DNA of 64,000 bases from IMG/VR virus record IMGVR_UViG_3300030503_000315, positions 62,001-126,000 of that record. One strand, given 5' to 3'. How positions within the stretch are numbered: the first letter of the stretch is position 1; the number at the start of each line of letters is the position of its first letter. The notes under the pieces are model-generated. The model saw only the letters and a program-made list of their open reading frames with translations, did not search any database and was not told the DNA's origin. Made by a program: the position numbers and the translations under genes. Shown piece after piece: positions 11,592 through 63,930 of the stretch.

Positions 11592-14265
11592 TAGCAGCTT
11601 GCGTTTTCAATTGCGACTCTCATATCCTGCACCACTTCTGCATACTTGAAACTCTTGCCTTGCCACGTGACCACTCGACTACGTTGATCGTACACCCCAG
11701 TATGATTCAGGTAGACAAATGTAATCATGTTAGCCCTCGTACTCTCTTCGAGATTTTATATCAATGCTGCATCGGGAAATCTCTTTACCTTCAAGTAAGA
11801 GGATTACGGAGCGTCCGTTGGGATCTGTGAATCCACCCTCTTCAACCTTGATCTCGAGATCATTCTTCAAAATCTCACGGCATATTGCTTCGATGCGCCA
11901 TATGGGCAACGTCATTTCTTGACCCCAGTATTTGCTCCAGCTTTGTTTCCATATTCGTTGTGGCGCTGGAAGGGTCGGCGCCACACGCCTGTCGTTCGGA
12001 ACGGGAAATTATTCCTCGTCTTTTCCCCCTGCCGTCTTCGGTGCCGCCTCATCTTCATCATATTTCATCAACAAAGTATCGAGTCTATTGCACCGGCTAC
12101 CTCGCATCTGCCTTCGAACACCGTAGTCATCAACACACCTCAGGAGATATAAAGCTTCCTCAAAATCTGCTTCGCCCATCATAGCTCTCTGTATTCTTCA
12201 TTCATGATTTTCACCAGGCTATTGGGTGATCGATTGATACTATCCTGTCGTTAGAGTCCGTGCTATTGATAGCCATCGCGACCCCAATCTTTGATGGAAG
12301 TTTTACAAAATCTTCGAAACTTATTTCTTTGCCCAGATAAGGCGCCAACTTATCCAGTTGGTTTTGAGTGAAAGAGTGGTCTTTCGGAATTTCAAGTCTC
12401 ATGATCTTCTCCTAAAAATCTTCTAGATCCTGTCTTCTTTCGTCCTCTTGAGCCTTCTTGTAAGCCTCCGCAAACTTAGAATCATTCACTTGGCCTTCTT
12501 GTACAAGGAAAACAACAAGCGCTCTTGCAGCAAAAGCTGCTTCTTCTGATCTATCTTGATTCCTATAACGAGCACCCGCGTAGTCACCATACTTAACATT
12601 GAAGTTATCCACTAATTCCTGCAATGTTTTACTCATGACCTCCTCCTTAGTTCGCCGCGCTTCTCGGCAGCTAGTTCACTGTCGGTTAGAAGTTGTAGTG
12701 GTCCTTTGTTGAAGGATGGACCTATACGTGACTGCAATTGTCGAAAATGCTCCTGCGCCCTGGCTTCACGTTCTGCCATCTCAGGACTCAGATATGGACG
12801 TGGTTCCGGATCCGGTGCAACGAATCGCTTCTCAACATGGTGAACTTCACGTCGCACCACAGGATACTGAGGCATCTTAGACCTATTGAACGCCTCAATG
12901 TCAGTCTTGCTTCTCTCCGTCCGAGCGAATCCAGAAGTCAGTGTTTTCAGTCTCTCTGCGTTGCATGAAAGTTGCAGGATCTCCTGTTCCCTCAACTGCT
13001 GGTTCTTCGATCTCTGCCTCGCAGCCTTCGCTTTCGATTTTAGACTCATGACCATACTCCTTAGTACCCGCCATCATCCGAATGATCTCATCCGCATCTG
13101 CATACGCGGCGTCAGTGTCAACTAATTTCTGTCGCTCCTGGATAAGCGCGGCCATAGGCCCTATCAGAATAGATACCTTACAAAGCCTATCCATATCATG
13201 AATACACCGGTCAAGTACTGCCAGGTTGCGGCACGCCCACTTTACATACAGGATGTGTAATCCGGGATTAGACTTCCGAAAATCACTTTCGTACTCTTTA
13301 GTCATGTCCGACTCCTTTATTTACCACTGTTCGAAATAGCGATTGATGGTCTGCGGATGGTCGTAAGTACGCCAGTCATGCTCGTTTTCAAACACGGCGA
13401 TAAGTGTCCGATTATTTCGACAGCACACCTCGTACACCCGCCCGGACACTGCCTGCACGACGAGACCAAAATCATCCCACACCTTGCAGATACGGCAGAG
13501 CTCCTTCTCGTGTCGTGCAGATGCGGCCGCGATCTCCTCCGGCATCTCCTCAGACATCCCAAGATTTATCAATTGAGGTTCAGGCATCGCCGGGTGTTTT
13601 GCTTGCCAGTCAGCCAGGTAGTTACGATATGCTTCAATCATCTTGCTCATTTTGTCCGGTCCTCGATACAAGTTATAGAACTGACTTGAGTTTTGCTAAC
13701 AGGTCCTCTATGCTTTCTACTTTGAGGTAGGTCTTACTAGACCTAGCTCCGTAAACTCCTATATGGACAGTTTTGTCTAGGAAATCTATCGATACTGTTG
13801 CCACCCTACCGTTCTTAGGCAGAATCAACGTGTCAGTGTAGAAGGTCACCCCAGACCCACTGATCTTTATGGAGAAATATTCCTCCAAAAACTCACGGAG
13901 TGTTTGAGACTCCGGTCTCAAGGCTGGTAACATATGCACTCCGTTTCGTTGGGAATGGCGAAGAGGGGCCCCGGTGGCCCCTCGTCTCTACTTTACAGCT
14001 TTGGGAATTCCAAAACATCGGGCAGGATACGTACGACTTGATAGTTCGTTGCCCGAGTCATGATGTACAAAACACCACTTCGGTCCTTCAACAACATCTT
14101 CAGGTCACGTTCGCGTTTTGCAGTCTTGGGAAGTTTTTCGACTTCCAGAATCAGTCCAACCTCGTTGTCCGAATCGTTCCACCACAGTTCCACCCACTGA
14201 CCTGCATGTAGGTCGAGTACGTTTACACCGTGTTTGTTGATACGCCAATCGGTTTTAACGACCAT
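11592..14265 (-). other. Run of small hypothetical CDS, including sub-60-aa ORFs not in the track (e.g. ~11592..11729, ~12007..12180)
   Basis: Tiling and SD sequences; includes 12211..12402, 12412..12636, 12633..13055, 12901..13305, 13321..13671, 13673..13933, 13993..14265. Confidence 0.55.
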
Positions 14266-14270
14266 GCTAA

Positions 14271-14288
14271 CTCCGTTTCGTTAGGAGG
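14271..14288 (-). promoter_or_regulatory. Conserved leader/RBS hairpin CCTCCTAACGAAACGGAG
   Basis: The exact 12-mer AACGAAACGGAG also occurs at 13939, 33307, 50452, 61336 and 63502, always 5-8 nt before a start codon. Confidence 0.8.
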
Positions 14289-14361
14289 AATTCGACGTGC
14301 GCATTTTGCGCACGTCGACTTGCATGGGCCGATGCCCGAGGTGGGCAAGGACCCACACCCT

Positions 14362-14406
14362 ATTGTAACATGGATGTCAATCCGACGTGTTGTATAAAAA
14401 CAACAC
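14362..14406 (-). promoter_or_regulatory. Class A promoter: ATGTTACAAT extended -10 plus GTGTTG-N8-CAACAC palindrome
   Basis: Intergenic; same architecture at 25218-25282, 33391-33452, 50534-50596 and 57773-57821. Confidence 0.72.
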
Positions 14407-14418
14407 CGTGTAAACCAC

Positions 14419-15543: not shown

Positions 15544-15569
15544 CCTGCATCTCCGAATCGATCAAATGG

Positions 15570-15601
15570 AAAAGGGCTTCCTCTAAATTGAAGGAAGCCC
15601 T
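15570..15601 (-). terminator. Rho-independent terminator
   Basis: GGGCTTCCT/AGGAAGCCC stem followed by TTTT on the minus strand, just after 15621..16397. Confidence 0.7.
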
Positions 15602-15620
15602 GTGTTACGTGATTCTGTTA

Positions 15621-16884: not shown

Positions 16885-17238
16885 TCACTGTTCAATGACG
16901 ATTTTCGACCTCGAGCAACACGACAACAATTGCTCGTACACCTCAGGGTCCACGTTGATGCAACCATCCGTGATCGACTTCCTGTCTTCAACGCTGTCCG
17001 AATGAAGACGTTCCAAACGATGCTGCTTGGGCTTCAACAACCACACTCGATGTACTGCGTACACACCACTCTCATCTCTAGCAAAGGCTAAAACATCTCC
17101 TCCGTAACCCGGTGCCAAAATCCGACTATGCTGCAACACGAATGTTCCCACTGGAGTCCGAGGACCAACCAAAGCCGGGTAGCAATGATTGGCCCAACAG
17201 ATCACAGCAGCTGCAAGATGCACAACCACTGTATCCAT
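16885..17238 (-). CDS. L,D-transpeptidase (YkuD) catalytic-domain protein
   Basis: YAVHRVW...SITDGCINV catalytic His/Cys motif; TPVGTF loop. Confidence 0.82.
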   Translation of the reverse strand: MDTVVVHLAAAVICWANHCYPALVGPRTPVGTFVLQHSRILAPGYGGDVLAFARDESGVYAVHRVWLLKPKQHRLERLHSDSVEDRKSITDGCINVDPEVYEQLLSCCSRSKIVIEQ

Positions 17239-17241
17239 TAT

Positions 17242-18738
17242 TTACTCGTGCGCCGGGGTCTTGATAAGCGGCAGCGGATCGGCCGCTACATTCGGCGTCG
17301 TGATGAATGAGCCCAGATCGCACGGGAGAATCTGAACGGTCGTCACCATCTGTTGGATCGAACCCGATGCACCCATACCACCCTGACCCCAACCCCCGTT
17401 CGAACCACCGGTTCCGATTGCGATGTTACGTGCGCCCGCCAGACCGACAATCGCCGTAAACATCACCACCTGCGAACCGAAACGATGATAGCCTGTACCG
17501 CGGTAATCAACGAACGGAACATCATGATACATCTCGTTGCCATTCGCATCCAACACGGGAGCAACCGTATCTTCATGACCTTGCTCGAACTTAGAGTTGA
17601 TCACCAGACCAAAGTACGTGCCTTCCACCGTCTGCGACGTCTTTTGCATAAGCGGACCGCACGCCATCGTTTCCTTCACAATGTTGCCAACTGCGAGTTC
17701 AGAAGGCGGCGTTGCCGGAACAACTGGCGGGATGTAGATCGCCTTGTAGCTTGAGTTCGTATTCGCATTCACGATCGTGCCACTCGACAACGAACCATTC
17801 CCAACGTTCTGCCCGTTTGCGTTCGACTGCGCGCCACCCGTCAGGGATTGAGCCCCACCCGTGTTCGAGGATGCGATCTTGTTAGTCGAAGACTGGCCTT
17901 GCCCTTGACTCGAGTTACCACCCTTGCTCGTCGTGTTGACACTTCCGCTATTGGTCGTTGCCGACCCTCCCTTTGTGTCACCATTCCCAGCCGACACCAC
18001 ATTGCCTCCCGTGGTGGATGCATTTCCGCTCTTGGTTGATGCGGTGCCTCCATTCGTTGTCGAAGTACCACCGTTCGCAGTTCCGCCCGTGGTGGTAGCG
18101 TTACCGCTTGTTGCATTTCCACCCTTGGTGTTTGCAGTTCCACCGTTCGTCGTCGCCGCGCCAGAAGTGGAGGATGCTGCACCCGCGTTGCTGGATGAGT
18201 TCGAGTTGCCGGCATTTGTCGACGAGTTACCAGCTTGGGTTGATGCAGGACCGGATTGAACGTTGCCCGAGTTGGACGAATTGACATTGCCACCGCTGTT
18301 GTTATTGTTGTTTGCACTTGATGTCGATGCTCCGGTCGACAGATTGTTACCACCACTATTCGAGGTGGAAGCACCCGTGCTGTTATTGTTGTTCGACAGA
18401 TTACCTGTCGCCGAGCCCCCCGCACCACCCTGTGAGCTGTTGTTTGCCGAATTGCTCGAAGTGTTCGCGCCGTTCGACATCGTGTTCTGTGGATTGTTAC
18501 CGTTCGTGTTCGTGAAACTGTTCCCATTCGAATTGGCTGAGTTGCCCAACTGATTCGAACTGGAAGTGTTCGTGCTGTTCGAAGCTTGACTCGTTGTCGA
18601 AGGATTGCCAACGTTCTGTGTCGATTCGGAACACGATACTGCGCCAGTATCACAGGAGCCCGTCGACTGGCTAACTTGTGCGTGTGCGGCTGCATTGAAT
18701 GCCAGGACGACGATTGCTGCGAAAATGGTCTTGTTCAT
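17242..18738 (-). CDS. Exported G/S/T/N-rich repeat protein with a C-terminal globular domain
   Basis: Signal peptide MNKTIFAAIVVLAFNAAAHA-Q; about 300 aa of low complexity with xxTxGG(T/N) repeats. Confidence 0.8.
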   Translation of the reverse strand: MNKTIFAAIVVLAFNAAAHAQVSQSTGSCDTGAVSCSESTQNVGNPSTTSQASNSTNTSSSNQLGNSANSNGNSFTNTNGNNPQNTMSNGANTSSNSANNSSQGGAGGSATGNLSNNNNSTGASTSNSGGNNLSTGASTSSANNNNNSGGNVNSSNSGNVQSGPASTQAGNSSTNAGNSNSSSNAGAASSTSGAATTNGGTANTKGGNATSGNATTTGGTANGGTSTTNGGTASTKSGNASTTGGNVVSAGNGDTKGGSATTNSGSVNTTSKGGNSSQGQGQSSTNKIASSNTGGAQSLTGGAQSNANGQNVGNGSLSSGTIVNANTNSSYKAIYIPPVVPATPPSELAVGNIVKETMACGPLMQKTSQTVEGTYFGLVINSKFEQGHEDTVAPVLDANGNEMYHDVPFVDYRGTGYHRFGSQVVMFTAIVGLAGARNIAIGTGGSNGGWGQGGMGASGSIQQMVTTVQILPCDLGSFITTPNVAADPLPLIKTPAHE

Positions 18739-33300: not shown

Positions 33301-33306
33301 GATGAA

Positions 33307-33452
33307 CTCCGTTTCGTTGGGAGGGCATGAAAAACGATAAATGTGCAAATGTCGCACGCGGCATTTTCCTTGCGGTGCGTCCGCAACACTATTCTATCAG
33401 AAACGCGCTCAACTGTGGTCGGGGTGCTGTGGTGTTGCAGAAAAACAACACC
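33307..33452 (-). promoter_or_regulatory. Class A promoter (TGATAGAAT plus GGTGTTG-N8-CAACACC) and AACGAAACGGAG leader
   Basis: -10 at 33391-33399, palindrome 33431-33452, leader motif 33307-33325. Confidence 0.7.
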
Positions 33453-33484: not shown

Positions 33485-33736
33485 CTACAGGAGGGTTATT
33501 CGCTGCGAGTAACGTCTGCCTTTCTCAGGGTTTGGTTTCGACTTCGGAAACAACACCACCGACCGTATCGGAACAGGTATTGGATCACCCGGTGCCACAG
33601 CTTTGCCGTTGATATGAACGGATTTTCCTTCCAGCCATCGCTTCAATTCCGAGCCAGATGCCACACCAATTCCCGACTGCTTCTGAAACTGACAGACGTC
33701 GTGCAACGACCTGAGCCACTGCATGCATGTCATCAT
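33485..33736 (-). CDS. S4-like RNA-binding domain protein
   Basis: SGSELKRWLEGKSVHINGKAV matches the S4 alphaL motif. Confidence 0.6.
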   Translation of the reverse strand: MMTCMQWLRSLHDVCQFQKQSGIGVASGSELKRWLEGKSVHINGKAVAPGDPIPVPIRSVVLFPKSKPNPEKGRRYSQRITLL

Positions 33737-40939: not shown

Positions 40940-40980
40940 GGGGCACCGCCGTTTGCCGACCATGCCCCAACTATTTACTA
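40940..40980 (-). promoter_or_regulatory. Class B motif TAGTAAATA (40972-40980) followed by a 5' hairpin
   Basis: Exact motif also at 44832, 47236 and 57266; GGGGCA/TGCCCC stem directly downstream. Confidence 0.62.
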
Positions 40981-43495: not shown

Positions 43496-43825
43496 TCAGG
43501 GTTTTACCAGAACCAGGCCCTGAGGTGGGGTTACGATCATTCCGGTGTCTTCCTGATACTTCTGTTCTAACGGTGCTGGTGCAGGACGCGGCATAACCAC
43601 ATCTTCATACGCGAGGATCATTTGCTCTATAGGTGGGAATGCACCAGAGCAGGTAAGGTACGGAATCAAAGCAAACTGCGGACCATGTTGTGTCATACCC
43701 GAAAGGAATTCCATCGGCTTTTCAATATGGAAGCCATAGTCATCTGACTTGGTAACTTTTGCTAAAACCGTCTGCCCACTGGCCAGGTGGAAAGCAATAA
43801 TTGATCCATCAGCAATTTCGTCCAT
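43496..43825 (-). CDS. Sm/Hfq-like small beta-barrel phage protein
   Basis: FHLASGQTVLAKV...IEKP...Y...TG.IVTP pattern seen in T4-like phage Sm-like proteins. Confidence 0.5.
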   Translation of the reverse strand: MDEIADGSIIAFHLASGQTVLAKVTKSDDYGFHIEKPMEFLSGMTQHGPQFALIPYLTCSGAFPPIEQMILAYEDVVMPRPAPAPLEQKYQEDTGMIVTPPQGLVLVKP

Positions 43826-44097: not shown

Positions 44098-44559
44098 TTA
44101 AGGATCTGGTGTAAAGTGACGCTGATACAGCTGCGCCAATGCGAGGTCATAAATTGCTTCACGAGATTTTGCCTGGGGATAGACACGCTTCAACATCTCG
44201 AGCATATACTGCTTCTTCTGGTCCAGTTCTAGGACAACCATCTTCTTCTTGTTTGGGTCTCCAGACGTTGCCTGGAATGCCATGTAGGCACGTGACGCCA
44301 GCCACAACAACTTCTTCTGCCTTTCGCCAAAGTCTCCGTACAGTAAATCAAAATATGGCTTCTTTGAACTCAAACGGTTTGCAATCTTGTGGAGCTTAGA
44401 GTGATGCATATCACAAAGCGAAACCTGCGGACCATCCACACCACCTGCCTGACGCGGGATGATATGGTGCTCTTCTCTATTTGCTGGGCCAGGCGGGTTC
44501 ACGTCGGAAAAACGCGCGCCACACACCCAACACTCTGGCAGGTTTGCTAGGGGTTGCAT
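44098..44559 (-). CDS. HNH endonuclease with an RHH-like C-terminus
   Basis: CWVC...EEHHIIPRQAGG..GPQVSLCDMHHSKLH; C-terminal MVVLEL strand followed by two helices. Confidence 0.8.
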   Translation of the reverse strand: MQPLANLPECWVCGARFSDVNPPGPANREEHHIIPRQAGGVDGPQVSLCDMHHSKLHKIANRLSSKKPYFDLLYGDFGERQKKLLWLASRAYMAFQATSGDPNKKKMVVLELDQKKQYMLEMLKRVYPQAKSREAIYDLALAQLYQRHFTPDP

Positions 44560-44840
44560 GATGATACCTTTTCGATTCGGCTATGAAACATGAAACTATT
44601 TGCGGTCTTTCCCGCCGTCAGACATATCACGCACTTCCGTACTAGCGACAAGGCACAGTATCAACCGACCCTACGGCGAACCACGCCAAGCATTTTGGGA
44701 AGTCCCAAGGAATATCTATGGAGGTGAAGGTAGCGTATATGCCATCCGGTGTTATTTCTGACAGCAGACACCTCCGGCTGGTCTGCTCCGCGGCAGTCGA
44801 CGTTCCACAGCGGCGTTGACTTGTACATGCGTATTTACTA
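44560..44840 (-). ncRNA. Candidate structured non-coding RNA or long leader downstream of a TAGTAAATA motif
   Basis: About 270 nt with no strong ORF; at least five stem-loops. Confidence 0.3.
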
Positions 44841-47181: not shown

Positions 47182-47235
47182 TTTAGTTTCCTGTTTGAAT
47201 CTGAAAAGTTAAGATGGGGAATATCCCCTACTGGT

Positions 47236-47244
47236 TATTTACTA
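47236..47244 (-). promoter_or_regulatory. Class B motif TAGTAAATA
   Basis: Intergenic, followed by a GGGGA/TCCCC hairpin, upstream of the H1-like gene. Confidence 0.62.
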
Positions 47245-49578: not shown

Positions 49579-50444
49579 TTAGCTCGCAGATTTGTCAATC
49601 AACCAAACATCGTACGCGTTGGTGAGTGGATCGAATCTGATTCTAAGAAGACCAAAAGTTTTCACAGGCCATTCCCAGACTGCGTAGTGACCCTTCCACT
49701 TCACCTTTGTTGGAACTTTTTCCCGCAAGTTGATGATTGTGGGCCTGCAATGTTTTGCAGTGAACTGAACTTTGCCACCGGCATTTGTCCAATGCCCTCC
49801 GACTTTGAGTCCGAGCTCATCTAACAGTTTTCGCGCCTTTTCAATGTCTGCTTTCATGCTCTCTCCGTTCCGTTGGAAGTTGTCCTAAATCAGAATGCGT
49901 CGTTCACGCCGTTGTAACGCGGAGTGCGAGTCTTGCGCGCCACAGTCTTCTTTGCTACCGGCTTCAGTGTCTTCTTAACCGCTACAGTTTTCGTCACAGC
50001 TTTCTTTGCGGGTGCAGGCTTGCCCCCGATTTTGCCACCAGCCTTCAGTGCGGTAACAACGAGGTCCATCGTGAACTTCATACGACGGCCGCTTTCGTCT
50101 GTAGCAACGAACGGGAATTTCGGGCGGCTGGGGTATAGACCGATCAGTGTGAATGTTTCCCCACGATACTCAAACGTGTCGTTCAAGCACGAAGCAGGAA
50201 CGCCAAACGAGTCAGAGTATCTTTTGAAATCCGCAGCCTCGGCAGATTCGACCGATCCGTCAGGGTTCACAACTGAAACGTTGATTTTCAGATCAACGCT
50301 CGTTGCTGTTTTCATTGTTCCACCGGCTGGTCGAAAAGCCACGCCATATTTGCGCCCGAGCGCTTCGAGCTCAGCGATCATTGCGTCGGAAAGGACGCGG
50401 CAGGCTGTACGGTCGAGGGTCTTGATTGCTGTTGTCTTTGCCAT
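49579..50444 (-). other. Two hypothetical CDS (49579..49857; 49890..50444 with a K/A-rich tail)
   Basis: ORFs preceded by AACG(A/G)AACGGAG leaders. Confidence 0.68.
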
Positions 50445-50451: not shown

Positions 50452-50596
50452 CTCCGTTTCGTTGGGAGGGTGTGAAAACGCGAACAACGCGCGAAAACCG
50501 AAGTGCGTTTTCGCTACGTGCCCATGCCATACTATTGTAACATTTCTGTCAGGTTTCGTGGAACATTCGAAAACAGTTGTAGGATAAAAACAACAC
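50452..50596 (-). promoter_or_regulatory. Class A promoter plus AACGAAACGGAG leader
   Basis: ATGTTACAAT at 50534-50543; palindrome variant with an 11-nt spacer at 50575-50596; leader 50452-50470. Confidence 0.68.
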
Positions 50597-50923: not shown

Positions 50924-52412
50924 GATCCTGATACGTCTGATCCTTCAGGACGAGATCGCGAACGCGCAGCACGTCGAGTAGCACCTTCTCTCTTGGTTTC
51001 TTCACCCACGCCTGCAGCTGCTTCAGCAACGTTTGCTGCTCCTTCAGTTTCGCCTTGTACTCGTTCTGGTTCAGCTTCGAGATTTTGCGCAGCTGCAGGT
51101 CACAGACCAACTTCGCCTGTTCTATAGTGATCTTCAGCGCTTTCACCAATGCTGCCTCAGGGTCCTCAGACTTCCGAATCGTCTTGATGATAAGATCAAT
51201 GTGATCCGCGGCGTAGATCATGAGCTCAGAGTACGCTATGTCACGTTCGGTATACGAGATGCGATACGCCAAGCTGCGCAACTCAAGCTTCATCCTCTCC
51301 CGAAGCCACGCAATAATCAACTGCGGAACTGACAGAGCTTCGATCTTCGTATCGAAACTGACAACGCCATCCTCGATGCTGGAAGTCCGTCTCGTCACAT
51401 TAATCTTGAACGGGCGACGTTTGACTGTTGCCTTCTGCACCTTTGCCACAAACTTATCAAACTGATCGAAGTTATACGCGGGCTTGCACACTACAGTGAA
51501 GGTAGTCGAACCTTCGGAGTTCAAGCATGTCAAACACTCGGGCATTTTCCGCACAGCTTCGGTGAACTTCTCAAGATCAGTTCCTGGTGGCCAATCGTTG
51601 ATGACGATACGTTTGCTGTCCCGATCGACCTGAAGATCAGACTCGAACTGTACACTTGCATAAGGTGAGGTGAACAACTGATTCCACTGTGCCTTGTTCT
51701 CTTTCGATTGAACAAGTTGCCCGCCCCAACGATGGCTGAACTTCAGCGTCTTGGCAAAATCCAGCGGCTGCAGTTTCTCACCCTTCAGCAATCTTTCAAT
51801 TACACTCACGACCGACACTGCAGTGAATGTTGGGATCATCGTGTTGATACCCACGCCGATGCCTTCGCCACCATTTAGAATGATGTTGGGTAGCTGTGCT
51901 GGCAGGGTGACTGGCTCGACCCACTTGTCATTGTAGTTGGGAACGAACGACGTTACTTCTTTCGCAATGTAATCCGGCTCCAGAAATGACAAGCCGTAAT
52001 CCGTCAGCTTGCACTCTGTGTATCGATACGCAGCGGCGCCGTCAACCATCGATCCCCAATTGCCACGACCGAAGATAGATGGAGTCGGCATGTTGACCAT
52101 CGTTACCATTGCGCCGTAGATAGAACCATCGCCGTGTGGGTGAAGTTTACCGAGAACGAATCCGACATGCTCACCAGCTTTCTGAATCGACTTCCCACCA
52201 TTCGCCGACATGCCCCAAAGAATGCGCCGATGCACCGGCTTCAAACCATCGAACAGATCCGGAACCGACCGATCCAGATTGGTCGTCACTGCGTATGTTG
52301 TCATGTTGCGTTCGCCAAATGAACGCAACGTTTCATTCTTCAAATGCTTATCTTCTTCCGGCACTAGACTACGTTGCTTGGTCGAGGCACGCTTCTTAGT
52401 TACCATGGTCAC
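50892..52412 (-). CDS. Type IIA topoisomerase subunit A (GyrA/ParC/T4 gp52-like, no beta-pinwheel CTD)
   Basis: DGLKPVHRRILW, HPHGD.SIY, AAAYRYTE (catalytic Tyr), P..LPN...NG..GI.VG. Confidence 0.93.
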   Translation of the reverse strand: MTMVTKKRASTKQRSLVPEEDKHLKNETLRSFGERNMTTYAVTTNLDRSVPDLFDGLKPVHRRILWGMSANGGKSIQKAGEHVGFVLGKLHPHGDGSIYGAMVTMVNMPTPSIFGRGNWGSMVDGAAAYRYTECKLTDYGLSFLEPDYIAKEVTSFVPNYNDKWVEPVTLPAQLPNIILNGGEGIGVGINTMIPTFTAVSVVSVIERLLKGEKLQPLDFAKTLKFSHRWGGQLVQSKENKAQWNQLFTSPYASVQFESDLQVDRDSKRIVINDWPPGTDLEKFTEAVRKMPECLTCLNSEGSTTFTVVCKPAYNFDQFDKFVAKVQKATVKRRPFKINVTRRTSSIEDGVVSFDTKIEALSVPQLIIAWLRERMKLELRSLAYRISYTERDIAYSELMIYAADHIDLIIKTIRKSEDPEAALVKALKITIEQAKLVCDLQLRKISKLNQNEYKAKLKEQQTLLKQLQAWVKKPREKVLLDVLRVRDLVLKDQTYQDREDNQELTVV

Positions 52413-55072
52413 GCCGCCTTCTTAAGTTTGGGTTTGACTCCACGCTTCTCTGCTGCCAGGTCCCGAATTGCGTCAGATATAGGACCGAGTCGCGCAACGC
52501 CTTTCCGTGGTACAGATTTCTTTACTGTTTTCTTCGCTGCGACTTTACGTGGTGGCTTTTCCTGTTCCTCATCGTCCTCTGAAACATCCGAGGCTGAAGG
52601 CAACCCAAAGATCTTCCGGCGATACGCAACGTCTTCGTCCATAAGTTTGACGAACTCGACTTTGTCTTCCTTCTCGATTGCTGAGATTCGAATTAGGCGA
52701 CGCGTCTGCGGGTCGCACGCAAGAATGCGCAGCAGATTCTTCGGAGCTTCCCCCCACCCCTTCAGGTGATTGATCTGAACCGAGGCCGGCGCCTTCAGCT
52801 TCGCCAACTTCTTCTTCATGATCGATACAGTGTCCGCTGTCACCAGTTGCGCTTTGTAGATCGAGTAGAACTCGGGGATCGCCGACACATACACCATCCC
52901 TCTAGCAAACAATTCAGGCAAGTACTTGTAGAACAACGTCAGGAGCAGTGAATTGATGTGGCAGTTGCTTGACACAATACCAGAGGGTAACATGAAGTTA
53001 TGATACCTAGGTACTGTCAAACAGTACACCGGTACGGGTTCGTTCAGATGTTGAACACGCAACTTGCTAACTGCGAAGAATCCTTTGCCCGTCATTCGAT
53101 CAATCAGATCCTTTGCTTTCCCAGTTGCTTCATTTTGAGGCGCATACACCCGATCACCAATTCGCATATCTTCTGCACGAATGTATGCCAGATTTTGGCT
53201 GTACACCTGATAGATACGATCACGCACTGCCGGGGTTCGCACGACCAGGAATTTGTGATTCAAATCGACTTTGTACTTGTGTCCACCAATCTCCATCGAT
53301 ACGAGCGTATCGACATTCTTCTGCAATGAAGCACTTGCAGGTTTCCACTGTAACTCTCCACCAGCCCACACAGGCACGGCGAAGGTTACGCCGGCCTCCG
53401 CAAGGTGCTGAATTGATCGCTGCTGTGATTTGGTGCCATCCAATCCTCCCATCGCAGGAGGTCTGAAGGAAATCAATGTTTCTCCAACGAACGGTCCATC
53501 CGGATCTGGGTCAGCCAGACAAATGATCTTTCCCATAGTCAGCTTCGAGTACGGGTCGGCCGCCTTCGGATCATACCCGATTGCTGCCAGGATGTTAATC
53601 ACTTCCTCAGAATCAAGAGGTGTCTTTTTCTTCGTCGGCTTCAGAGCATTCATGATCTTGCCACGCAACGGCAAGATAGCCTGATACGCGAACCGCGCTT
53701 CCTTTAGCTTGCCCGTCGCAGAATCACCTTCTGTGAGGAAGAGTTCGCGATCATGCACCTTCGTCTTCGGATCGAACCCTGCATATTTTGCAGGCAGACC
53801 CATGCGCTTGACCTTGTTCAGATCAGCAGCGTTCTTCTTCGACATGTTGAACTGATTGCGCGCCTCATTGACTTTCGTCGCCTTGTCGCACAACCTTTGT
53901 GCCATTGCCTTGTTCTCTTTGAAGAACTTTGTTGCTTCGACAATGAGCTTGTCTTCCAGACCTTTGCCCATACGTTCATCCGACAGGAACACCTTGTCCT
54001 GAGAATTGAACTTTGCCTTGTGCAACTTGGCATTGACGACGCCAACCAGACCTTCTTTCAAATCGACTTCGCGGAATACAGGGACGAGTTTGCCGTCGAC
54101 CTTACGTGTCTTGATGTACGGCTTCAATGCCTGATACAGAGCGCCCGTTACTGAGTCAACGTGCTTACCACCCTTGCTATTGAAAGAACCATTAGTGAAC
54201 CCACGAAGGTCGCAGTCGCCATAGTCAGAAAAAGCAACCACGACATCAGCCGCGTGAGGATCCCCATGAACAGACTTGTACTCGAAGATCGTCTTCTCCG
54301 CCTGTGCCTTGAGCTTTGCAAGACGCGCATCAATGTACTCCTTAACTCCAGCCTTGGATAGATACTTCTTTTCGCTTTTAGCTGACTTGATGCGTATCGT
54401 CACACCCGGGTTGAAGTACGCCATCATCTCTGCCCATTCCAGCGCCATTTGCGTCGGAAACTTCGAGCTAGAGAAAATCGACATGTCGGGTTTGCAATGA
54501 ATCAGCGTCCCGGACTTCACCACGCCTTCAGGTCCGCGCGGCGCCTTGCACTTCGACACCGGGGTAACAAGCACACCCTTCTTGAACCCTATGGTGTACC
54601 ACTGACCTTCGAAAAAGGTGTAGACCGTGAAGTACTCACTTGTCGCGTTGGTGCCCTTGCTGCCGATGCCATGCGTCCCGATCGACACTTCATATGCTGC
54701 GGTGTCGTACTTGCCAGACGTATTCAGTGCTCCGAATACAGCTTGCATGGTCGACATCTTATTAATGATATCTTTGCCGTTTACGTGAATCTTTGTCTTC
54801 GTAACCCCCTGTGGTACACCATGCCCCGCATCGCTTACCCAGAACGATCCGTCCTTGTCCAGGTATAGACCGACCATATCATTCCGGCCGGCCAGCGCTT
54901 CATCCAAACCGTTGTCGAGAAGTTCTTTGATAATCATCCACAGGCCGTAGCTATCGGTGCCGCCAATGTACTGGCTAGCATTGCGACGCACCGACTCAGG
55001 GAAGACCAGACTCTTGATATTAGCTGAAGTGTACTTCGCGACTTTCTTAGCTGCTACTTTTTTGATTACCAT
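52409..55072 (-). CDS. Type IIA topoisomerase subunit B (GyrB/ParE-like) containing an intein
   Basis: GHKL motifs ELLDNGLDE, DAGHGVP, GTHGIG; Toprim TEGDSA, PLRGKIMN, DPDPDG; KGWGE. Confidence 0.93.
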   Translation of the reverse strand: MVIKKVAAKKVAKYTSANIKSLVFPESVRRNASQYIGGTDSYGLWMIIKELLDNGLDEALAGRNDMVGLYLDKDGSFWVSDAGHGVPQGVTKTKIHVNGKDIINKMSTMQAVFGALNTSGKYDTAAYEVSIGTHGIGSKGTNATSEYFTVYTFFEGQWYTIGFKKGVLVTPVSKCKAPRGPEGVVKSGTLIHCKPDMSIFSSSKFPTQMALEWAEMMAYFNPGVTIRIKSAKSEKKYLSKAGVKEYIDARLAKLKAQAEKTIFEYKSVHGDPHAADVVVAFSDYGDCDLRGFTNGSFNSKGGKHVDSVTGALYQALKPYIKTRKVDGKLVPVFREVDLKEGLVGVVNAKLHKAKFNSQDKVFLSDERMGKGLEDKLIVEATKFFKENKAMAQRLCDKATKVNEARNQFNMSKKNAADLNKVKRMGLPAKYAGFDPKTKVHDRELFLTEGDSATGKLKEARFAYQAILPLRGKIMNALKPTKKKTPLDSEEVINILAAIGYDPKAADPYSKLTMGKIICLADPDPDGPFVGETLISFRPPAMGGLDGTKSQQRSIQHLAEAGVTFAVPVWAGGELQWKPASASLQKNVDTLVSMEIGGHKYKVDLNHKFLVVRTPAVRDRIYQVYSQNLAYIRAEDMRIGDRVYAPQNEATGKAKDLIDRMTGKGFFAVSKLRVQHLNEPVPVYCLTVPRYHNFMLPSGIVSSNCHINSLLLTLFYKYLPELFARGMVYVSAIPEFYSIYKAQLVTADTVSIMKKKLAKLKAPASVQINHLKGWGEAPKNLLRILACDPQTRRLIRISAIEKEDKVEFVKLMDEDVAYRRKIFGLPSASDVSEDDEEQEKPPRKVAAKKTVKKSVPRKGVARLGPISDAIRDLAAEKRGVKPKLKKAA
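52964..53494 (-). mobile_element. 177-aa mini-intein (Hint domain, no homing endonuclease), class-3-like
   Basis: Begins PFVGETL, block B DLNHKF, block F VYCLTV, ends GIVSSN followed by +1 Cys; removal restores DPDPDG-CHINSLL. Confidence 0.88.
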
Positions 55073-58608: not shown

Positions 58609-59311
58609 GATGTTGCTCCGTTAGGTGTGATATGGTTAAATGATTCAATTCCGACTGCAAGATGAAAATTAGGGTTTGCGCGTGCTTCTCAGCATACGCA
58701 CGAATGACTTCAGCCGGTTTTCCTTGCTGATGCAGCATTGCGATCTGAAACGTTGGATCATTCCTCAGGCGCTGAAGCGAAACTTGCGGTCGCTGCAACT
58801 CTTGCTTCAAGTACTCGCGACCTTGGTGACATCGCCAAGCCCACTTGCCTGCACCTGTGTTTTTTACTAACATCAGATATGTTTCCTGAAGGAAAGTCAA
58901 ATCCCCCAGACGATACGCTGCTACGACCAACTGGAACAACTCTGAATCACCTCCACGATCCGGGTGAACGAGTGGGGCAACCATCCGATATGCATTTTTT
59001 ACTAGATGCGCCTGAGCATTGTACAGTTGCTCTGTTCCTGCAGTTATATAACCTGCGGAAGTGATCGCGTCCTGTGCAATCGTTGCAGGCGTACCCCGTG
59101 TAGCCAATCGGATTTCTCTACGCAACCGAATGATTGTTTTAGCCTCAGGCATCTCGTCCAGGTACGACGACACAAGCTTCATCGAAGAATTGTAGAGCTT
59201 GTAGTATTGCTGCCTTGCAGCATCGACCTTGCGCGCCAACAAATCGTACTCGTACAGGTGCGCGAGATTGACTGTCAAATTAATCGGTATAAGGTTAGGC
59301 ACTGTACACAC
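58427..59311 (-). CDS. J-domain (DnaJ-like) co-chaperone
   Basis: VKNAYRMVAPLVHPDRGGDSELFQLVVAAY contains the HPD motif. Confidence 0.78.
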   Translation of the reverse strand: MCTVPNLIPINLTVNLAHLYEYDLLARKVDAARQQYYKLYNSSMKLVSSYLDEMPEAKTIIRLRREIRLATRGTPATIAQDAITSAGYITAGTEQLYNAQAHLVKNAYRMVAPLVHPDRGGDSELFQLVVAAYRLGDLTFLQETYLMLVKNTGAGKWAWRCHQGREYLKQELQRPQVSLQRLRNDPTFQIAMLHQQGKPAEVIRAYAEKHAQTLIFILQSELNHLTISHLTEQHHGNSQESSNKENSGEENSQWEVGDFEQQEGRTERQSVDSAGESATGTCQGRSREEDESEG

Positions 59312-59650: not shown

Positions 59651-59658
59651 AGTAGCTC

Positions 59659-60575
59659 CTAACGAGCTTTGTAATCTTTCGGATCAAACTCTAATCCGTG
59701 GTCCTCTGCCACAAAAGCGAACTCCTTCAGAAGAACTTGACGAACTTGCCGTTTGGTGGAGCCGATGTATTCGTAGTCGTATAGATCATCATGAACAGTT
59801 TGTAGCTCACACAATAAACTGATATGCTTCTCAAGCAATTTTTTGTACGATTTGTGTTTCGGAGCGGTGATGAATTTACCTAGCTCGTCAACTGCTTTAG
59901 CTTCCATAAGAGGAACATAAATCTCATCTGGAATAATACACCCAACGGCACACATGAGTCCTTTGGAACCCCTATAAGCACAGGTTTCAGTGCCATCTTC
60001 CGCCACTCCCATAGACGCCTTACCTTGCTTGTACAGGAAATGAGTGATGTAGTCGAATAGCTGCTGAGCAGTGATGCTCGGATCAATCATCTTCGGAAGA
60101 TCGCGTTTCATACTTGACCTCTCTTTACTGTATAGTCTTGCGAATCGAACTCCAGACCTTCCTGTGTGGCGAGAATCTGAAATCTCACCAACAATCCTCG
60201 ACGGACTTCATCCCTAGTCAGACTTTCATCGTCGAATGAATCATGGATGCCCTGCAATTCATTCAGAAGATACTCGTGTTCATCTACTAGACGCCAGTAT
60301 TTCTTTTCGCCTTTCCTATTGCGATACGTGCTGAGGATACCTTCCACGTCTCTGCCTTCCATATCCTTGCGATAGAAACGGTCGGGCAGGAAACATCCCA
60401 TGGCACACATTAGGCCACCATCACCTCGATACAGACAGGTCTTGTCGTCCTGATCATCTCCAGGCATAACTCCTATAGACGCCATACCTTGCTGGTACAG
60501 AAAGTGGGTGATGTAATCGAAAATTTGTTGGTCGGTCATTGATGCCGTAATCATTGTCGGCAATTCGCGTTTCAT
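59659..60575 (-). other. Tandem paralogous pair (59659..60111, 60108..60575)
   Basis: MKR(D/E)LP.MI..S.T.QQ.FDYITHFLY.QG...C.YRG..GLMCA.GC. Confidence 0.85.
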
Positions 60576-60594
60576 GTTCTTCTCCTGAACTTAA

Positions 60595-63500
60595 TTAAGC
60601 GTGGGCTTCAACCGAACCAACCGGATTCTTTGCCTTCATCAGAAACTTCTCGATCTCTGAATCCTTCCGCATGATGGGTGTGGCACCAAGATGTTCTGTA
60701 ACCCAGGCAAGAGCCTCGGCCTTCGAGACGAAGGGTTGAATCGCTGGTGTGGTTTTGATAACCTCGCCAAACTCGTTCTGAATGTTGATCTTACGCGTCG
60801 TGCTACGCAATGCATTCCAACCCTTTTGTCCGGGGTTGCGAATGAGCACGACCCAATGTGGTGCCACATACTCCACGCAGCATTGGATCTCAGCAGCTTT
60901 TTTATTCTTGAAATTAAACATGATTGTTATTTCCTTTTCGTTTGGAATGGTTGTTTAACGTGCGGATGAATTTGTTAGGCGTGGTCTTGGTACAAAACAG
61001 GGAACAAATGGTGAACGACGATTCGGGTAGGCCTTACGTAAGACCTCTTTGCGCTCACGAACTTGTGTTCGAATCTGCCAAGACTTGCGTCTAGCGATTA
61101 GGCTTCTTGGCCACATGTTACTTCACCTTTTCGTTCGGTAATTAGAAGAGATAGTTTGAAGACCAAATAGCAATGGTCAAACAAACGAAGGCTGCAACAC
61201 AAGCGGCATTGTATGCGTGACCTTTGAACTTCGGATTTCTCAACGCATCAAGCAGGCTGAAGAACATAAACATTGCTGCTACCTGGACTGTCATTACATA
61301 AATCCAAGGTACTTCTGTTGGACTATCCACTTCAACTCCGTTTCGTTAGGAATGTTCCTCAGCCATTTGCTTTCGTCTTCTTTGCCTTGACAATAACTTT
61401 GGACTTTGACGTCTTCACCTGAGGTAAGGAAAGTAGGCCACGCTCTTCAAGAACTTTTCGTTCAGCAGGGTTCAACTTTGCCAGAGCACCTTGAATCATG
61501 TTCTGAGCTTTATTCTCTGCCTCTACTTTCCGCCGTTGGGCTTCGTCATCCTTCTTGTGTTGATTCCACCAGGTTAAAAGTTCGGTGATATGTTTCTCTT
61601 CAACCTCCGCATCCTTGAGAGCGAGCTGAACACCAAGTTTCCCTGGCCTCGCGAACTCAAGCGCCGTCAGAGCGTTACACGCGATACGTGCAAGCTTGTC
61701 CCTTTGCTCCTTGTTCGCTTCCCAACCGCGCTCGTAGTTGTGGTCATCTTCGTAATCTCTGCACGGCATGATTCACTCCTTGAAGGTCATCTTGATATTA
61801 GGAACAGCAACAGAGCCTTGGTCGATGCTAAGGACCAGAGTGTCCCATGTTACATCGACCGAAAGTAACTTATCACACTTCTGTTGTGAAAGCGCATTAA
61901 GCGTGGTGGAAACAATTTCCTTTACTGCGAACAGCTTGTCTGTTGACTTGGATCCTGAATTCATACAACTCACCTCAGTATGCGCGACGTTGATATTTCT
62001 GAACCTGTTTATCGACCTGAACCATACGAATTTTGAATTCGTTATGGAGGGGGTAATGGATCGCCTGACGTTTCGTTTTCCGAACCGGGAAGTTACCGCC
62101 CCACTGAGCCTCACGTCGCAGCTGATACTTGCAAGCACAGTAGAACCCGATAGCCACCGATAGGAGGATCATCAGCGCGCAGATTACCAATGCAGCGATT
62201 TGCTGCTCGACTGAGTTCGCGGTGACGAACAGGTAGGACGGAAATGCAATCGCCAGGAGAAGACCCAAGCCGGTGATCTTGCACATAAGTTTGAACGGTG
62301 ACATCTTATTCTCCTTAATCGTCTTCGCCAGCATCATCACCTACTGTGTAGGTAACGACACCTTGTCGTTGCTTCATCTCAGCCAGCAGGATCTCCAGGC
62401 TGGAGATCATGACCGGGCGCTGTTCGTCGTGCGGTTTGGACTTTTCCAAATCCAGCAAACTTTGGATCCAACCCACCTGGGCTGTGGCTAAACCATTGCT
62501 GGAAGCACCCACAATGTCTTCCCATAACCCCTGAATCGTGCCACGACAATTGATTAAGGCAGAGAGCGCCCACAGTTCAATAGAACTGTCAGAGTTCGGC
62601 TGCGCATGCATATAGTGCTTCTCCAAAAACGCGCGGAGCTCCTTATAGTCTGAGACTTCGCGGGAGTTGCGATGCAGGATCATCGGGTTAACCTTCTTGT
62701 CTGCGTCTCTCATGATTTACTCCGTAACGTATTTGACTCTGACATTGGTCCACGCCGATTGCTTCATCGGTACCTTCTTGCCCATCTTTGCGTAGAAGCG
62801 CCGGACAGCCTCACCATTGATATCCATCCTGGAGCCCGGGACAAAGTCCAACTCCATGAGGAAATCATGCGGATCTGCAAACTGGAAATTCTCTCCAGCT
62901 ACTTTTGCTTCGAGGAATTCTTCGAGCGACTGCGCTTCGGTTTTGATTTCCCTCAGACGTGCGGTCAACTTCGCTTGTTCTTCCTGCAGCTTGTGCAGCT
63001 CAAACGCGTAGTCTGAAATCTTCTTGCTCGAGACAAACTTCATGATTCATCTCCCTCAAAATCAGTCCAGCCATCGTCTGTTTTCACATCTACGTGATCC
63101 AGCTTTTTCTTCCAAGCTTCGAACTCTTGCAGACGCTGGTCGTACACATTGCACGCAACCATAGCGGCCTTGTTGAGGCTCTCCATAACCTTCTTGAGAG
63201 AAATCGAACAACCACCAAGTAGCCGGTGGTAGTCTTTGACAGTCAAAGTCACACCGCTGTGCATCAATGCGGACTCATATCCACACAAACAGGATCCCGT
63301 GTCAAACGTCATAGCCACTCCATCCGCATCGACCTGAAGAAGTTCAAAGTCGTAGAAGCAGTCGCCTGTGTGTTCGGTCTTGACCAGGAACTCGCCAACA
63401 TGTTTTCTATCCCGACCTTCAGATTGACTGGTGCGGGACATCCCCGAAGGGTTCGCGATAACCCAAACTACATGATCGATTTTACCACGAATCATTTTAT

Positions 63501-63930
63501 TCTCCGTTTCGTTAGGAGGTTGTGATTACTTACTCAGGCAGATAGCCTTGGCACGACTTACCAATGTTTCTTCGCTGAGCTCAGGATGAGCATACGCGTA
63601 CGTGATTACGCGCATCGTTGCTGCCTTCCCTGCTGCATCTCCCGGTGCCTCGTCCATCTTCTGCTGCACCTGTGCAAGTGTAGGTGCAAGAGGAGGTCCC
63701 GTGCTAACCATTGCATACGCAGCATGCGCCGTGTCGTCCGCATGCTCGTTGCAGAACGAGGGGTCGAGACCACTAGGTGTCGTCCCGATTAAGTAGACAA
63801 TCCACAAAATTGTGGCGACTGTCCCGGCGCAGGCTAGACCCATGAGGGTGTATCCGAGACCCCGACCGAAGGATCTAATGTTCATCCTGAACTCCTGTGG
63901 TAACAGGTCGAGCGTAGGTGAGTGTGACAT
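60595..63930 (-). other. Run of small hypothetical CDS (60595..60921, ~60957..61117, 61142..61330, 61359..61769, 61773..62138, ~62091..62307, 62315..62713, 62717..63043, 63040..63495, 63526..~63880)
   Basis: Tiled ORFs; several preceded by the AACGAAACGGAG leader or variants. Confidence 0.6.

What the first reader, a model, noticed from the sequence alone, without database searches (positions are those of the whole stretch)
13939..63519. Recurrent leader hairpin that sequesters the Shine-Dalgarno behind a conserved AACGAAAC loop
Seen: the exact 12-mer AACGAAACGGAG (plus strand ctccgtttcgtt) occurs at 13939, 14271, 33307, 50452, 61336 and 63502, always 5-8 nt before a start codon. It is preceded by (C/T)TCC(C/T), which can pair with the GGAG SD. 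Variants keep the pairing with different bases: TTCC-AAACGAAAA-GGAA (~60931), ACC-GAACGAAAA-GGT (~61128), CC-GAATCGAAAA-GG (~44568), and a near copy at 49863. Six exact 12-mers in 64 kb is far above chance. Inference: a translational regulon read by a phage RNA-binding protein or nuclease (compare T4 RegA, RegB cleavage at GGAG, or boxB-like loops). Candidate readers in the window are the S4-like (33485) and Sm-like (43496) proteins.
Basis: partly seen in the sequence, partly recalled or inferred. Interest (0 to 1): 0.68.

Follow-up and report, generated by a model that had tools for sequence, protein, structure and literature searches.

The report
Conserved ribosome-site leader box in jumbo phages
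A 17-base signal (C-rich arm, AACGAAAC box, GGAG ribosome-binding site) sits just before the start codon of about a dozen small genes of this peat jumbo phage and recurs in distant relatives such as Ralstonia phage phiRSL1, so it is a real, selected translation-start signal whose reader is unknown.

Summary
AACGAAACGGAG occurs 6 times in the window (8 in the 215-kb phage genome; 0.01-0.03 expected). All copies lie on the coding strand, abut nothing but the Shine-Dalgarno (SD) site, and sit 5-7 nt before a start codon. Four degenerate copies bring the window total to 10.

The window belongs to a phiRSL1-like jumbo phage from peat. The same module is strongly enriched in phiRSL1 (13 copies) and in four metagenomic relatives. 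Core proteins of these phages are only about 50-60% identical, and the module precedes non-orthologous small ORFan genes.

In this phage, phiRSL1 and one relative, the arm pairs with GGAG in a weak 4-bp hairpin. There are three compensatory changes, and the SD is predicted about three times less accessible than at other genes. In two other relatives only CC/GG pairing survives, and in one there is no arm. The universal part is therefore the AACGAA-type box next to the SD.

The best reading is an mRNA-level translation-initiation control module for a class of early/middle genes. No RegA, RegB, CsrA or Hfq homologue is present. This is a new variant of a known kind, of moderate to high interest.

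The parts
13939..13955 (-). Module copy TTCC-C-AACGAAAC-GGAG, 5 nt before the ATG of an 86-aa ORFan (13673-13933). A terminator-like hairpin (13963-13983) lies just upstream.
14271..14287 (-). Module copy CTCC-T-AACGAAAC-GGAG, 5 nt before the ATG of a 90-aa ORF (13993-14265). It is the first gene after the promoter-like TGTTACAAT at 14362-14370. A leader hairpin lies at 14294-14316.
33307..33323 (-). Module copy CTCC-C-AACGAAAC-GGAG, 6 nt before the ATG of a 19-codon mini-ORF (33241-33300). The promoter-like TGATAGAAT (33391-33399) lies 72 nt upstream.
50452..50468 (-). Module copy CTCC-C-AACGAAAC-GGAG, 7 nt before the ATG of a 184-aa HicB-like gene (49890-50444). The promoter-like TGTTACAAT (50534-50542) lies 70 nt upstream, with a leader hairpin at 50491-50514. 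The phiRSL1 homologue (inside annotated ORF315) also carries the module.
61336..61352 (-). Module copy TTCC-T-AACGAAAC-GGAG, 5 nt before the GTG of a 62-aa ORFan (61142-61330). It lies inside an operon, 11 nt after the upstream stop codon.
63502..63518 (-). Module copy CTCC-T-AACGAAAC-GGAG, 6 nt before the ATG of a 151-aa ORFan (63040-63495). It lies inside an operon, directly after the upstream stop codon.
49863..49879 (-). Variant TTCC-AACGGAAC-GGAG, 5 nt before the ATG of a 92-aa ORFan (49579-49857).
60931..60947 (-). Variant TTCC-A-AACGAAAA-GGAA (arm and SD changed together), 9 nt before the ATG of a 108-aa conserved gene (60595-60921).
61124..61140 (-). Variant TACC-G-AACGAAAA-GGTG (U-A to A-U swap in the stem), 7 nt before the ATG of a 53-aa ORF (60955-61116).
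44565..44581 (-). Weak variant CC-GA-ATCGAAAA-GGTA, 5 nt before the ATG of a 153-aa core gene (44098-44559). Only CC/GG can pair.
43496..43825 (-). 109-aa protein with a predicted Sm/LSm fold. It is a single-copy core gene in all 8 genomes compared. It is a candidate trans-acting reader, not shown to bind.
33485..33736 (-). The evidence is weak: Pfam S4 E=0.065, model pLDDT 70, Foldseek E>=0.57, although the top rows are S4-domain proteins.

Best explanation
The motif is a stereotyped translation-initiation module written in the mRNA. It consists of a C-rich arm (YTCC plus one base), an invariant A/C-rich box (AACGAAAC), a minimal 4-nt Shine-Dalgarno (GGAG) abutting the box, and a start codon 5-7 nt further on.

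phiRSL1-like jumbo phages put this module in front of a small class of genes, about 3-4% of all genes. These are mostly small ORFans at the head of, or inside, early/middle transcription units. All other genes use the ordinary (T)AAGGAG site.

In this phage the arm pairs with GGAG in a weak 4-bp hairpin, and the box is its 9-nt loop. The short SD is therefore mostly occluded at rest, and translation depends on what engages the single-stranded box. That could be the 30S subunit with protein S1 acting as a standby site, or a specific RNA-binding protein. The genes carrying the module thus form one translationally co-controlled class.

Shown: existence, enrichment, position, strand, conservation across the lineage, independence from gene orthology and from promoter type, and predicted pairing with a few compensatory changes.

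Inferred: that the hairpin forms in vivo, that a trans-factor reads the box, and the direction of control (on or off).
For: - Enrichment: 6 copies against 0.01 expected in the window, and 8 against 0.03 in the genome.
- All copies are on the coding strand, the box-SD spacing is invariably zero, and the SD-start spacing is 5-9 nt.
- The same module is enriched in other genomes: phiRSL1 12-13 copies against 0.05 expected, G002 7 against 0.7, G004 7 against 0.4, G005 9 against 0.6, and G008 (rearranged form) 10 against 0.06. Core proteins of these phages are only ~50-60% identical.
- Orthologues of the two conserved module-bearing genes lack the module in other genomes, and most module genes are ORFans.
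- The module occurs after sigma70-like extended -10 sites, after AGTAAATA-type sites, after terminator-like hairpins, and directly after stop codons.
- Pairing: 94.5% of cells paired, 3 double changes (TTCC/GGAA twice, TACC/GGTG once), and 2 of 500 shuffles reach the covariation score. 4 contiguous bp in 29 of 32 sites against 1-4% of other RBSs.
- The SD unpaired probability is 0.16, 0.22 and 0.13 at module genes against 0.42, 0.41 and 0.39 at other genes in own, phiRSL1 and G002 (p=0.002, 0.014, 0.0008).
- The host does not use the module: 2 non-RBS hits in 2.0 Mb of R. solanacearum, 0 in 1.1 Mb of B. cenocepacia, and only scattered single hits in the truncated scan (first 120 stretches) of 185,579 species genomes.
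Against: - The hairpin is marginal, about -4 kcal/mol. The leaders are no more stable than shuffled sequence, with z from -0.3 to +1.4.
- In G004 and G005 the SD is GGAA but the arms are CCCC or AACC, so only 2-3 bp form. In G008 there is no arm. SD accessibility there equals that of other genes. Occlusion is therefore not the conserved core of the function.
- The covariation rests on only three sites.
- No homologue of a known translational repressor or nuclease was found.
- No RNA data exist for this phage; the public runs are peat DNA only.
- Part of the box can be explained more simply. In the AAAAGGA(G/A) variants, the A-run extends SD pairing to the 16S 3' end ...CCUCCUUU.
Confidence: 0.5

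Rival explanations
1. Constitutive translational enhancer or standby site. The unstructured A/C-rich box next to the SD simply recruits 30S/S1 efficiently, so that early phage mRNAs out-compete host mRNAs. There is no dedicated regulator, and the C-rich arm is secondary.
For: - The box is the only universally conserved part, and it persists where the arm is lost (G008) or cannot pair fully (G004, G005).
- The leaders are less structured than shuffled sequence.
- In the AAAAGGA(G/A) variants and in BCSR5's AAGAAAGGAC, the A-run extends pairing to the 16S 3' end CCUCCUUU.
- The genes concerned are promoter-proximal early-type genes.
Against: - The invariant AWCG part lies beyond the reach of the 16S 3' end.
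- In most copies a C separates the A-run from GGAG, which shortens the SD rather than lengthening it.
- The host replicons tested do not use the box.
- No structural or late gene of the phage uses it.
- In three genomes the SD of this class is predicted to be less accessible than average, not more.
Confidence: 0.25
2. Passive end of a mobile promoter-leader cassette, like the T4-type PeSL. The identity within a genome is kept by duplication, recombination or gene conversion between cassettes that shuffle ORFans. The box has no function of its own beyond carrying an SD.
For: - Within genomes, whole leaders of 45-60 nt are repeated: own genome 128876 and 112463; G005 GGAATCACTGCACTGAATC...; G008 from the -10 site to the ATG.
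- The genes behind the module are mostly ORFans, and 183 of 352 proteins of this phage have no homologue in 7 relatives.
- PeSLs are defined as a sigma70-like promoter, a stem-loop, and an SD plus start codon at the 3' end, and they mediate ORFan shuffling (PMC2839356, PMC4122927).
Against: - Across genomes the leaders differ completely, yet the box and SD stay nearly identical over protein distances of ~0.4 substitutions per site per branch.
- 6 of the 10 window copies have no promoter-like site upstream and sit inside operons.
- The arm and SD change together in three copies.
Confidence: 0.12
3. Target of a nuclease that cuts at GGAG in the SD (RegB-like) to inactivate early mRNAs.
For: The SD of this class is always GGAG or GGAA in early-type leaders. 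T4 RegB cleaves GGAG in early SDs (established knowledge, from memory).
Against: - There is no RegB family match in the genome at E<=1.
- As far as I recall, RegB needs no conserved upstream octamer.
- There are no RNA reads with which to look for cleavage.
Confidence: 0.05
4. DNA-level site, such as a promoter for modified host RNA polymerase, an operator or a recombination site.
For: - phiRSL1 encodes no RNA polymerase and depends on the host enzyme (PMC5468394), so phage-specific promoter motifs must exist.
- CTCC...GGAG is a short inverted repeat.
Against: - The position is fixed relative to the SD and start codon, but variable relative to -10-like sites (17 to 79 nt).
- The motif is strictly strand-specific.
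- A transcript starting after a promoter at this position would lack room for the SD.
- A different motif, AGTAAATA(A/G), fits the role of phage-specific promoter.
Confidence: 0.05

Closest known systems
PeSL (promoter-early stem-loop) regulatory cassettes of T4-type phages (Arbiol et al. 2010, PMC2839356; Comeau et al. 2014, PMC4122927)
   Same: Both are repeated composite intergenic cassettes in front of small ORFans in plastic genome regions. Both contain a sigma70-like promoter, a stem-loop, and an SD plus start codon at the 3' end. Four window copies have exactly this layout.
   Different: In PeSLs the conserved parts are the promoter and a G/C stem-loop terminator. No conserved box abutting the SD is described. 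Here the conserved part is the SD-proximal box, it also occurs without any promoter, and it is conserved between phages whose leaders are otherwise unalignable.
T4 RegA translational repression and T4 RegB cleavage of early mRNAs
   Same: In both cases a set of early phage mRNAs shares a feature at the ribosome-binding site, through which one phage factor can shut them off post-transcriptionally. GGAG is the SD.
   Different: No RegA or RegB homologue is present. RegA sites are AU-rich and overlap the start codon, and RegB needs only GGAG (from memory). Here an invariant octamer lies 5' of the SD, and there is a complementary arm.
RBS-sequestering hairpins in read-through transcripts of T4 e, soc and I-TevI (from memory)
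   Same: The SD is paired with an upstream complementary segment, so translation depends on whether or how the hairpin is opened.
   Different: The T4 hairpins are long, stable and gene-specific, and they are relieved by a promoter inside the hairpin. Here the stem is 4 bp, the loop sequence is conserved and repeated at many genes, and no internal promoter is evident in this window.
Hfq/Crc binding to A-rich CA motifs (AAnAAnAA) and CsrA/RsmA binding to A(N)GGA at ribosome-binding sites
   Same: An A-rich single-stranded element at or next to the SD is bound by an RNA-binding protein to repress initiation. ACGGA fits A(N)GGA. The phage encodes an Sm-fold protein (Hfq is an Sm protein).
   Different: The box does not fit AAnAAnAA or (ARN)n. 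GGA lies in the stem, not in a loop. No Hfq or CsrA family match was found in the phage. The Sm-like protein resembles 3BY7 and eukaryotic Sm proteins, not Hfq, by sequence.
Lambda nut boxB hairpin
   Same: A small hairpin with an A-rich purine loop in early leaders.
   Different: boxB is a 5-bp stem with a GNRA-like pentaloop, is partnered with boxA, and is not tied to an SD. Here the stem is 4 bp, the loop is 9 nt, and the 3' arm is the SD itself.

Membership tests
T4 RegB target set | A RegB endoribonuclease (Pfam PF10715) is encoded by the phage | tested here: not met
   no match at E<=1 in the 215-kb genome (91% complete).
T4 RegB target set | Cleavage inside GGAG of early SDs | not testable with these tools
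   No RNA run holds this phage.
T4 RegA operator set | A RegA translational repressor (Pfam PF01818) is present | tested here: not met
   no match at E<=1.
PeSL cassettes | A sigma70-like promoter, a stem-loop, and an SD and start codon at the 3' end, repeated in front of ORFans | tested here: inconclusive
   4 of the 10 window copies have TGnTAnAAT 70-79 nt upstream and a leader hairpin. The other 6 have no promoter-like site. The -35 elements are poor, and the generic scan did not list these sites.
PeSL cassettes | Recombination between cassettes (mini-circles, ORFan swaps) | not testable with these tools
   The contigs laid showed no joints, but contigs cannot show rare circles.
Lambda-type nut (boxA + boxB) | A 5-bp stem with a GNRA-like pentaloop, and a boxA partner | tested here: not met
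   The stem is 4 bp and the loop is 9 nt. No Rfam family matches in the window.
CsrA/RsmA sites | A(N)GGA presented in a hairpin loop, and CsrA present | tested here: not met
   ACGGA is present, but GGA lies in the predicted stem. There is no CsrA match in the phage. The host is unknown.
Hfq (ARN)n / Crc CA motif | AAnAAnAA or repeated A-R-N triplets, and Hfq present | tested here: not met
   AACGAAAC fits neither register (read). There is no Hfq family match in the phage.
SD-sequestering leader hairpin (generic) | The SD is base-paired with an upstream anti-SD-like segment, supported by covariation | tested here: met
   This holds for this phage, phiRSL1 and G002. It does not hold for G004, G005 and G008.
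Sm/LSm fold (protein 43496-43825) | A small five-stranded bent beta-barrel matching solved Sm/LSm structures | tested here: met
   AF2 pLDDT 85.7. Foldseek top hit is 3BY7 with TM 0.69/0.86 and E 3e-4, followed by spliceosomal Sm proteins. RNA binding was not tested.

The most novel reading that the evidence does not exclude
The Sm-fold protein is a single-copy core gene of the whole phiRSL1-like lineage (window 43496-43825; phiRSL1 ORF009). In this reading it forms a ring that binds the single-stranded AACGAAAC box abutting the SD. It thereby switches a whole class of early ORFan mRNAs off (or on) as infection proceeds. This would be a phage-encoded, Hfq/Crc-like or RegA-like translational regulon with its own defined operator, and it could be tested in a culturable system (phiRSL1 on Ralstonia solanacearum).
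Probability: 0.15. Interest if true: 0.8.

Novelty: new variant of a known kind. Interest (0 to 1): 0.6.

Why it matters
Temporal control in jumbo phages that rely on the host RNA polymerase is poorly understood. Most of their early genes are unannotatable ORFans.

A short, sharply defined signal at the ribosome-binding site has been kept over deep divergence while the genes behind it turn over. This signal does three things:
- It marks those genes as one expression class.
- It corrects start-codon annotation. In phiRSL1, for example, the module lies inside annotated ORF019, ORF315 and ORF337.
- It gives a concrete cis-element with which to fish for the factor that reads it.

phiRSL1 and its host are culturable, so the hypothesis can be tested directly.

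Tried and rejected
- **Known RNA families.** The Rfam scan of the window found nothing.
- **Known readers.** Pfam RegB, RegA, CsrA and Hfq searches of the genome found nothing.
- **Host-derived signal.** The 17-mer gives only scattered single hits in unrelated taxa among 185,579 species genomes; the scan was truncated at 120 rows. The R. solanacearum megaplasmid has 2 non-RBS hits and a B. cenocepacia replicon has none.
- **16S complementarity.** The Ralstonia and Burkholderia 16S rRNAs end in ...CACCUCCUUU. This explains AAAGGA(G)-type variants as extended SDs. It does not explain the AWCG part or the C before GGAG.
- **RNA evidence.** All 24 public runs holding the stretch are peat DNA contigs. 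Laying four of them showed 35 strain differences in 5.5 kb, none inside the four module copies, but that number is too small to mean anything.
- **Orthologous-leader conservation.** Orthologues of genes 60595 and 44098 in other genomes do not carry the module.
- **Literature.** A full-text search for the motif string and for phiRSL1/BcepSauron promoters found no description. The original phiRSL1 paper (Yamada 2010) is not held, so I cannot exclude that it mentions the motif.
- **A possible second stem.** An upstream CGUU could pair with AACG of the box to give a pseudoknot. I looked at this by eye and dropped it, because phiRSL1's ATCG box is not matched by its upstream ACGTT.
- **Generic promoter scan.** It did not list the extended -10 sites, so their status as promoters is an inference from recurrence and position.

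Full report
**What is there.** The 12-mer AACGAAACGGAG occurs six times in the window, at the stated coordinates, always on the minus strand. Dinucleotide shuffles give 0.01. The window is bases 62001-126000 of a 215,315-bp IMG/VR phage record, 91% complete. That record holds eight copies, all on the same strand, against 0.03 expected from a first-order Markov model. All genes of the window run on the minus strand.

Every copy is followed after 5-7 nt by a start codon. It is preceded by CTCC or TTCC plus one pyrimidine. A covariance model built from the sites recovers exactly these ten places in the window and no other at E<=1.

The ordinary ribosome-binding site of this phage is (T)AAGGAG. 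The ACGGAG class is a distinct minority.

**What the phage is.** The window encodes a type IIA topoisomerase in two subunits, an NAD-dependent ligase, a type IB topoisomerase and a Nudix protein, among others. The nearest named phages are Ralstonia phage phiRSL1 (GyrA-like subunit 57.5% identical), Burkholderia phages BcepSauron/BcepSaruman, and BCSR5. About 65-80 of 352 predicted proteins are shared with these and with four metagenomic relatives, at 30-80% identity. 183 proteins have no homologue in any of them.

A tree of 20 concatenated core proteins gives (this phage, phiRSL1), (G002, G005), G004 and (G008, BcepSauron), with BCSR5 outermost. Branches are about 0.3-0.5 substitutions per site (0.8 for BCSR5). 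The DNA comes from peat metagenomes, and no RNA run holds it. phiRSL1 encodes no RNA polymerase and is rifampicin-sensitive (PMC5468394).

**Conservation.** This is the main new result.

| Genome | Form of the module | Copies |
|---|---|---|
| phiRSL1 | CTCC-C-ATCGAAA(C/A)-GGAG, 5-7 nt before start codons | 13 |
| G002 (217.6 kb) | CTCC-C-NNCGAAAC-GGAG | 7 |
| G005 | CC-Y-AACGAAAA-GGAA | 9 |
| G004 | CCCC-Y-AWCGAAAA-GGAA | 6 |
| G008 | AAACGAAC-C(A)-GGAG, 17-22 nt after a TGTAYAAT -10 site | 10 |
| BcepSauron | weak copies | 3 |
| BCSR5 | its own recurrent TGTC-R-AAGAAAG-GACA | about 8 |

Each form is enriched 10- to 250-fold over expectation and is strand-specific. G006 and G009 give weak model hits. 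Five more distant relatives give none.

The genes behind the module are mostly ORFans. Where a module gene of this phage is conserved (60595-60921 and 44098-44559), its orthologues elsewhere do not carry the module. An exception is the HicB-like gene at 49890-50444, whose phiRSL1 homologue does carry it. The signal therefore follows a class of genes, not gene descent. It has been kept while all surrounding leader sequence diverged.

**Context.** Four of the twelve copies in the genome lie 70-79 nt downstream of TGnTAnAAT, an extended -10-like site. Three of these are in the window, at 14271, 33307 and 50452. Most of them have a GC-rich leader hairpin in between.

phiRSL1 copies lie 32-66 nt after TG(G)CATAAT. 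G008 copies lie 17-22 nt after TGTAYAAT, and G005 copies lie about 27 nt after TATACT. Other copies follow an AGTAAATA-type site, a terminator-like hairpin, or the stop codon of the preceding gene.

The distance to anything upstream varies. The distance to the SD never does. Together with strict strand specificity, this places the function in the mRNA at the initiation step. It argues against a promoter or operator.

**The hairpin.** RNAfold predicts the CUCC/GGAG stem with the 9-nt loop in most copies, at about -4 kcal/mol. The leaders as a whole are not more stable than shuffled sequence.

On 32 sites from this phage, phiRSL1 and G002, 94.5% of cells pair. Three sites show changes on both sides: TTCC/GGAA in two genomes and TACC/GGTG in one. 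Only 2 of 500 shuffles reach the covariation score, and slid registers fall to 29-52% paired. Four contiguous pairs occur at 29 of 32 sites, against 1-4% of other RBSs with the same geometry.

The SD is predicted unpaired with probability 0.16, 0.22 and 0.13 at module genes, against about 0.4 at other genes (p = 0.002, 0.014 and 0.0008).

In G004 and G005, however, the SD is GGAA while the arms are CCCC or AACC. Only 2-3 pairs form there, although CC/GG is retained at 15 of 15 sites. G008 has no arm. In these three genomes SD accessibility is average.

The occluding hairpin is thus a real feature of this phage and of two of the relatives compared. It is not the lineage-wide core of the signal. 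The core is the AACGAA-type box abutting the SD.

**What reads it.** The 16S rRNA of Ralstonia and Burkholderia ends in ...CACCUCCUUU. The AAAGGA(G) variants therefore extend SD pairing to the rRNA end. The invariant AWCG lies beyond that end, and the C before GGAG in most copies shortens the pairing.

The host replicons tested do not use the box, and no bacterial taxon stands out in a genome-wide scan. The phage has no RegA, RegB, CsrA or Hfq family member.

The protein at 43496-43825 folds with confidence (pLDDT 85.7). It matches the Sm/LSm-like structure 3BY7 (TM 0.69/0.86) and spliceosomal Sm proteins. It is a single-copy core gene in all eight genomes, including phiRSL1 ORF009. Phage LSm-like proteins with suspected RNA roles have been described in T4 (PMC12152347). 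That makes it a reasonable candidate reader, but nothing here shows binding.

The 'S4-like' protein at 33485 has only a sub-threshold S4 hit and insignificant fold matches.

**Verdict.** The most likely reading (about 0.5) is a translation-initiation control module that defines a co-regulated class of early/middle ORFan genes. In this phage it works through a weak SD-occluding hairpin whose conserved loop is the recognition element.

The rivals are:
- a constitutive enhancer or standby site (0.25);
- a passive PeSL-like cassette end (0.12);
- a RegB-like cleavage target (0.05);
- a DNA-level site (0.05).

It resembles T4 PeSL cassettes in layout (PMC2839356, PMC4122927) and RegA/RegB or Hfq/Crc control in logic. 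It meets the defining features of none of them. I found no description of the motif in the held literature, but the original phiRSL1 paper could not be read.

Noticed in passing
window 47235-47243(-), 40971-40979(-), 17238-17246(-); 15 copies in the genome: A second recurrent upstream motif, AGTAAATA(A/G), lies in gene orientation 20-60 nt before starts, in both strand blocks including the structural-gene arm. It is also enriched in phiRSL1, BCSR5, G004, G005 and G008. It looks like a phage-specific (middle or late) promoter, analogous to the T4 late TATAAATA.
   Followed up: partly
window 33241-33300(-): The module at 33307, behind a promoter-like site, drives only a 19-codon mini-ORF (MAQSDEYKLQEIADFLTGI). 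A 74-aa gene with an ordinary AAGGAG site follows. This could be a micro-protein or a leader peptide.
   Followed up: partly
phiRSL1 NC_010811.2: 7841, 214179, 227772 (loci L034, L044, L045): Three module copies, each with its start codon, lie inside annotated ORF019, ORF315 (HicB-like) and ORF337. At ORF019 and ORF315 the module-led start is in frame with the annotated ORF. At ORF315 a promoter-like GGCATAAT also lies inside the annotated ORF. The deposited starts are probably too far upstream.
   Followed up: partly
BCSR5 MW460245.1: 64831, 65136, 80526, 80960, 84220 and others (loci L063, L064): BCSR5 has its own recurrent RBS module, TGTC-R-AAGAAAG-GACA (7-8 copies against 0.4 expected). 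The architecture is the same, a short stem around an A-rich loop with the SD in the 3' half, but the letters differ. AAAGGA also matches the 16S 3' end UCCUUU.
   Followed up: partly
window 52409-55072(-): The 887-aa GyrB-like large topoisomerase subunit has a weak, sub-threshold intein-splicing hit (PF14890, E 5.8e-6, 26.6 bits against a cut-off of 35.8) between the Toprim domain and the C-terminal domain.
   Followed up: no
window 2612-4294(-): A 560-aa protein has a eukaryotic-type topoisomerase IB catalytic core (PF01028, E 6e-19), which is unusual in a phage.
   Followed up: no
window 8353-8604(-): An 83-aa PC4-like single-stranded-DNA-binding protein (PF02229, E 7e-7, above the cut-off) is conserved in six of the seven relatives compared.
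   Followed up: no
window 36817-37995(-): A 392-aa protein combines a solute-binding-protein family 3 domain with a C-terminal LysM domain.
   Followed up: no
window 58775-59048, 62652-62774, 63757-63789: Strain differences between peat samples are clustered in three short patches. The rest of the 5.5 kb is identical in four runs. This is consistent with localised recombination or hypervariable ORFan segments.
   Followed up: no
G002 31943-33380 (L116); G004 87251-102329 (L185, L186): In the G002/G004/G005 clade a further conserved element, CTGAT(A), lies 8-12 nt upstream of the box. In this phage and phiRSL1 an ACGTT element lies at a similar distance. Its meaning is unknown.
   Followed up: no
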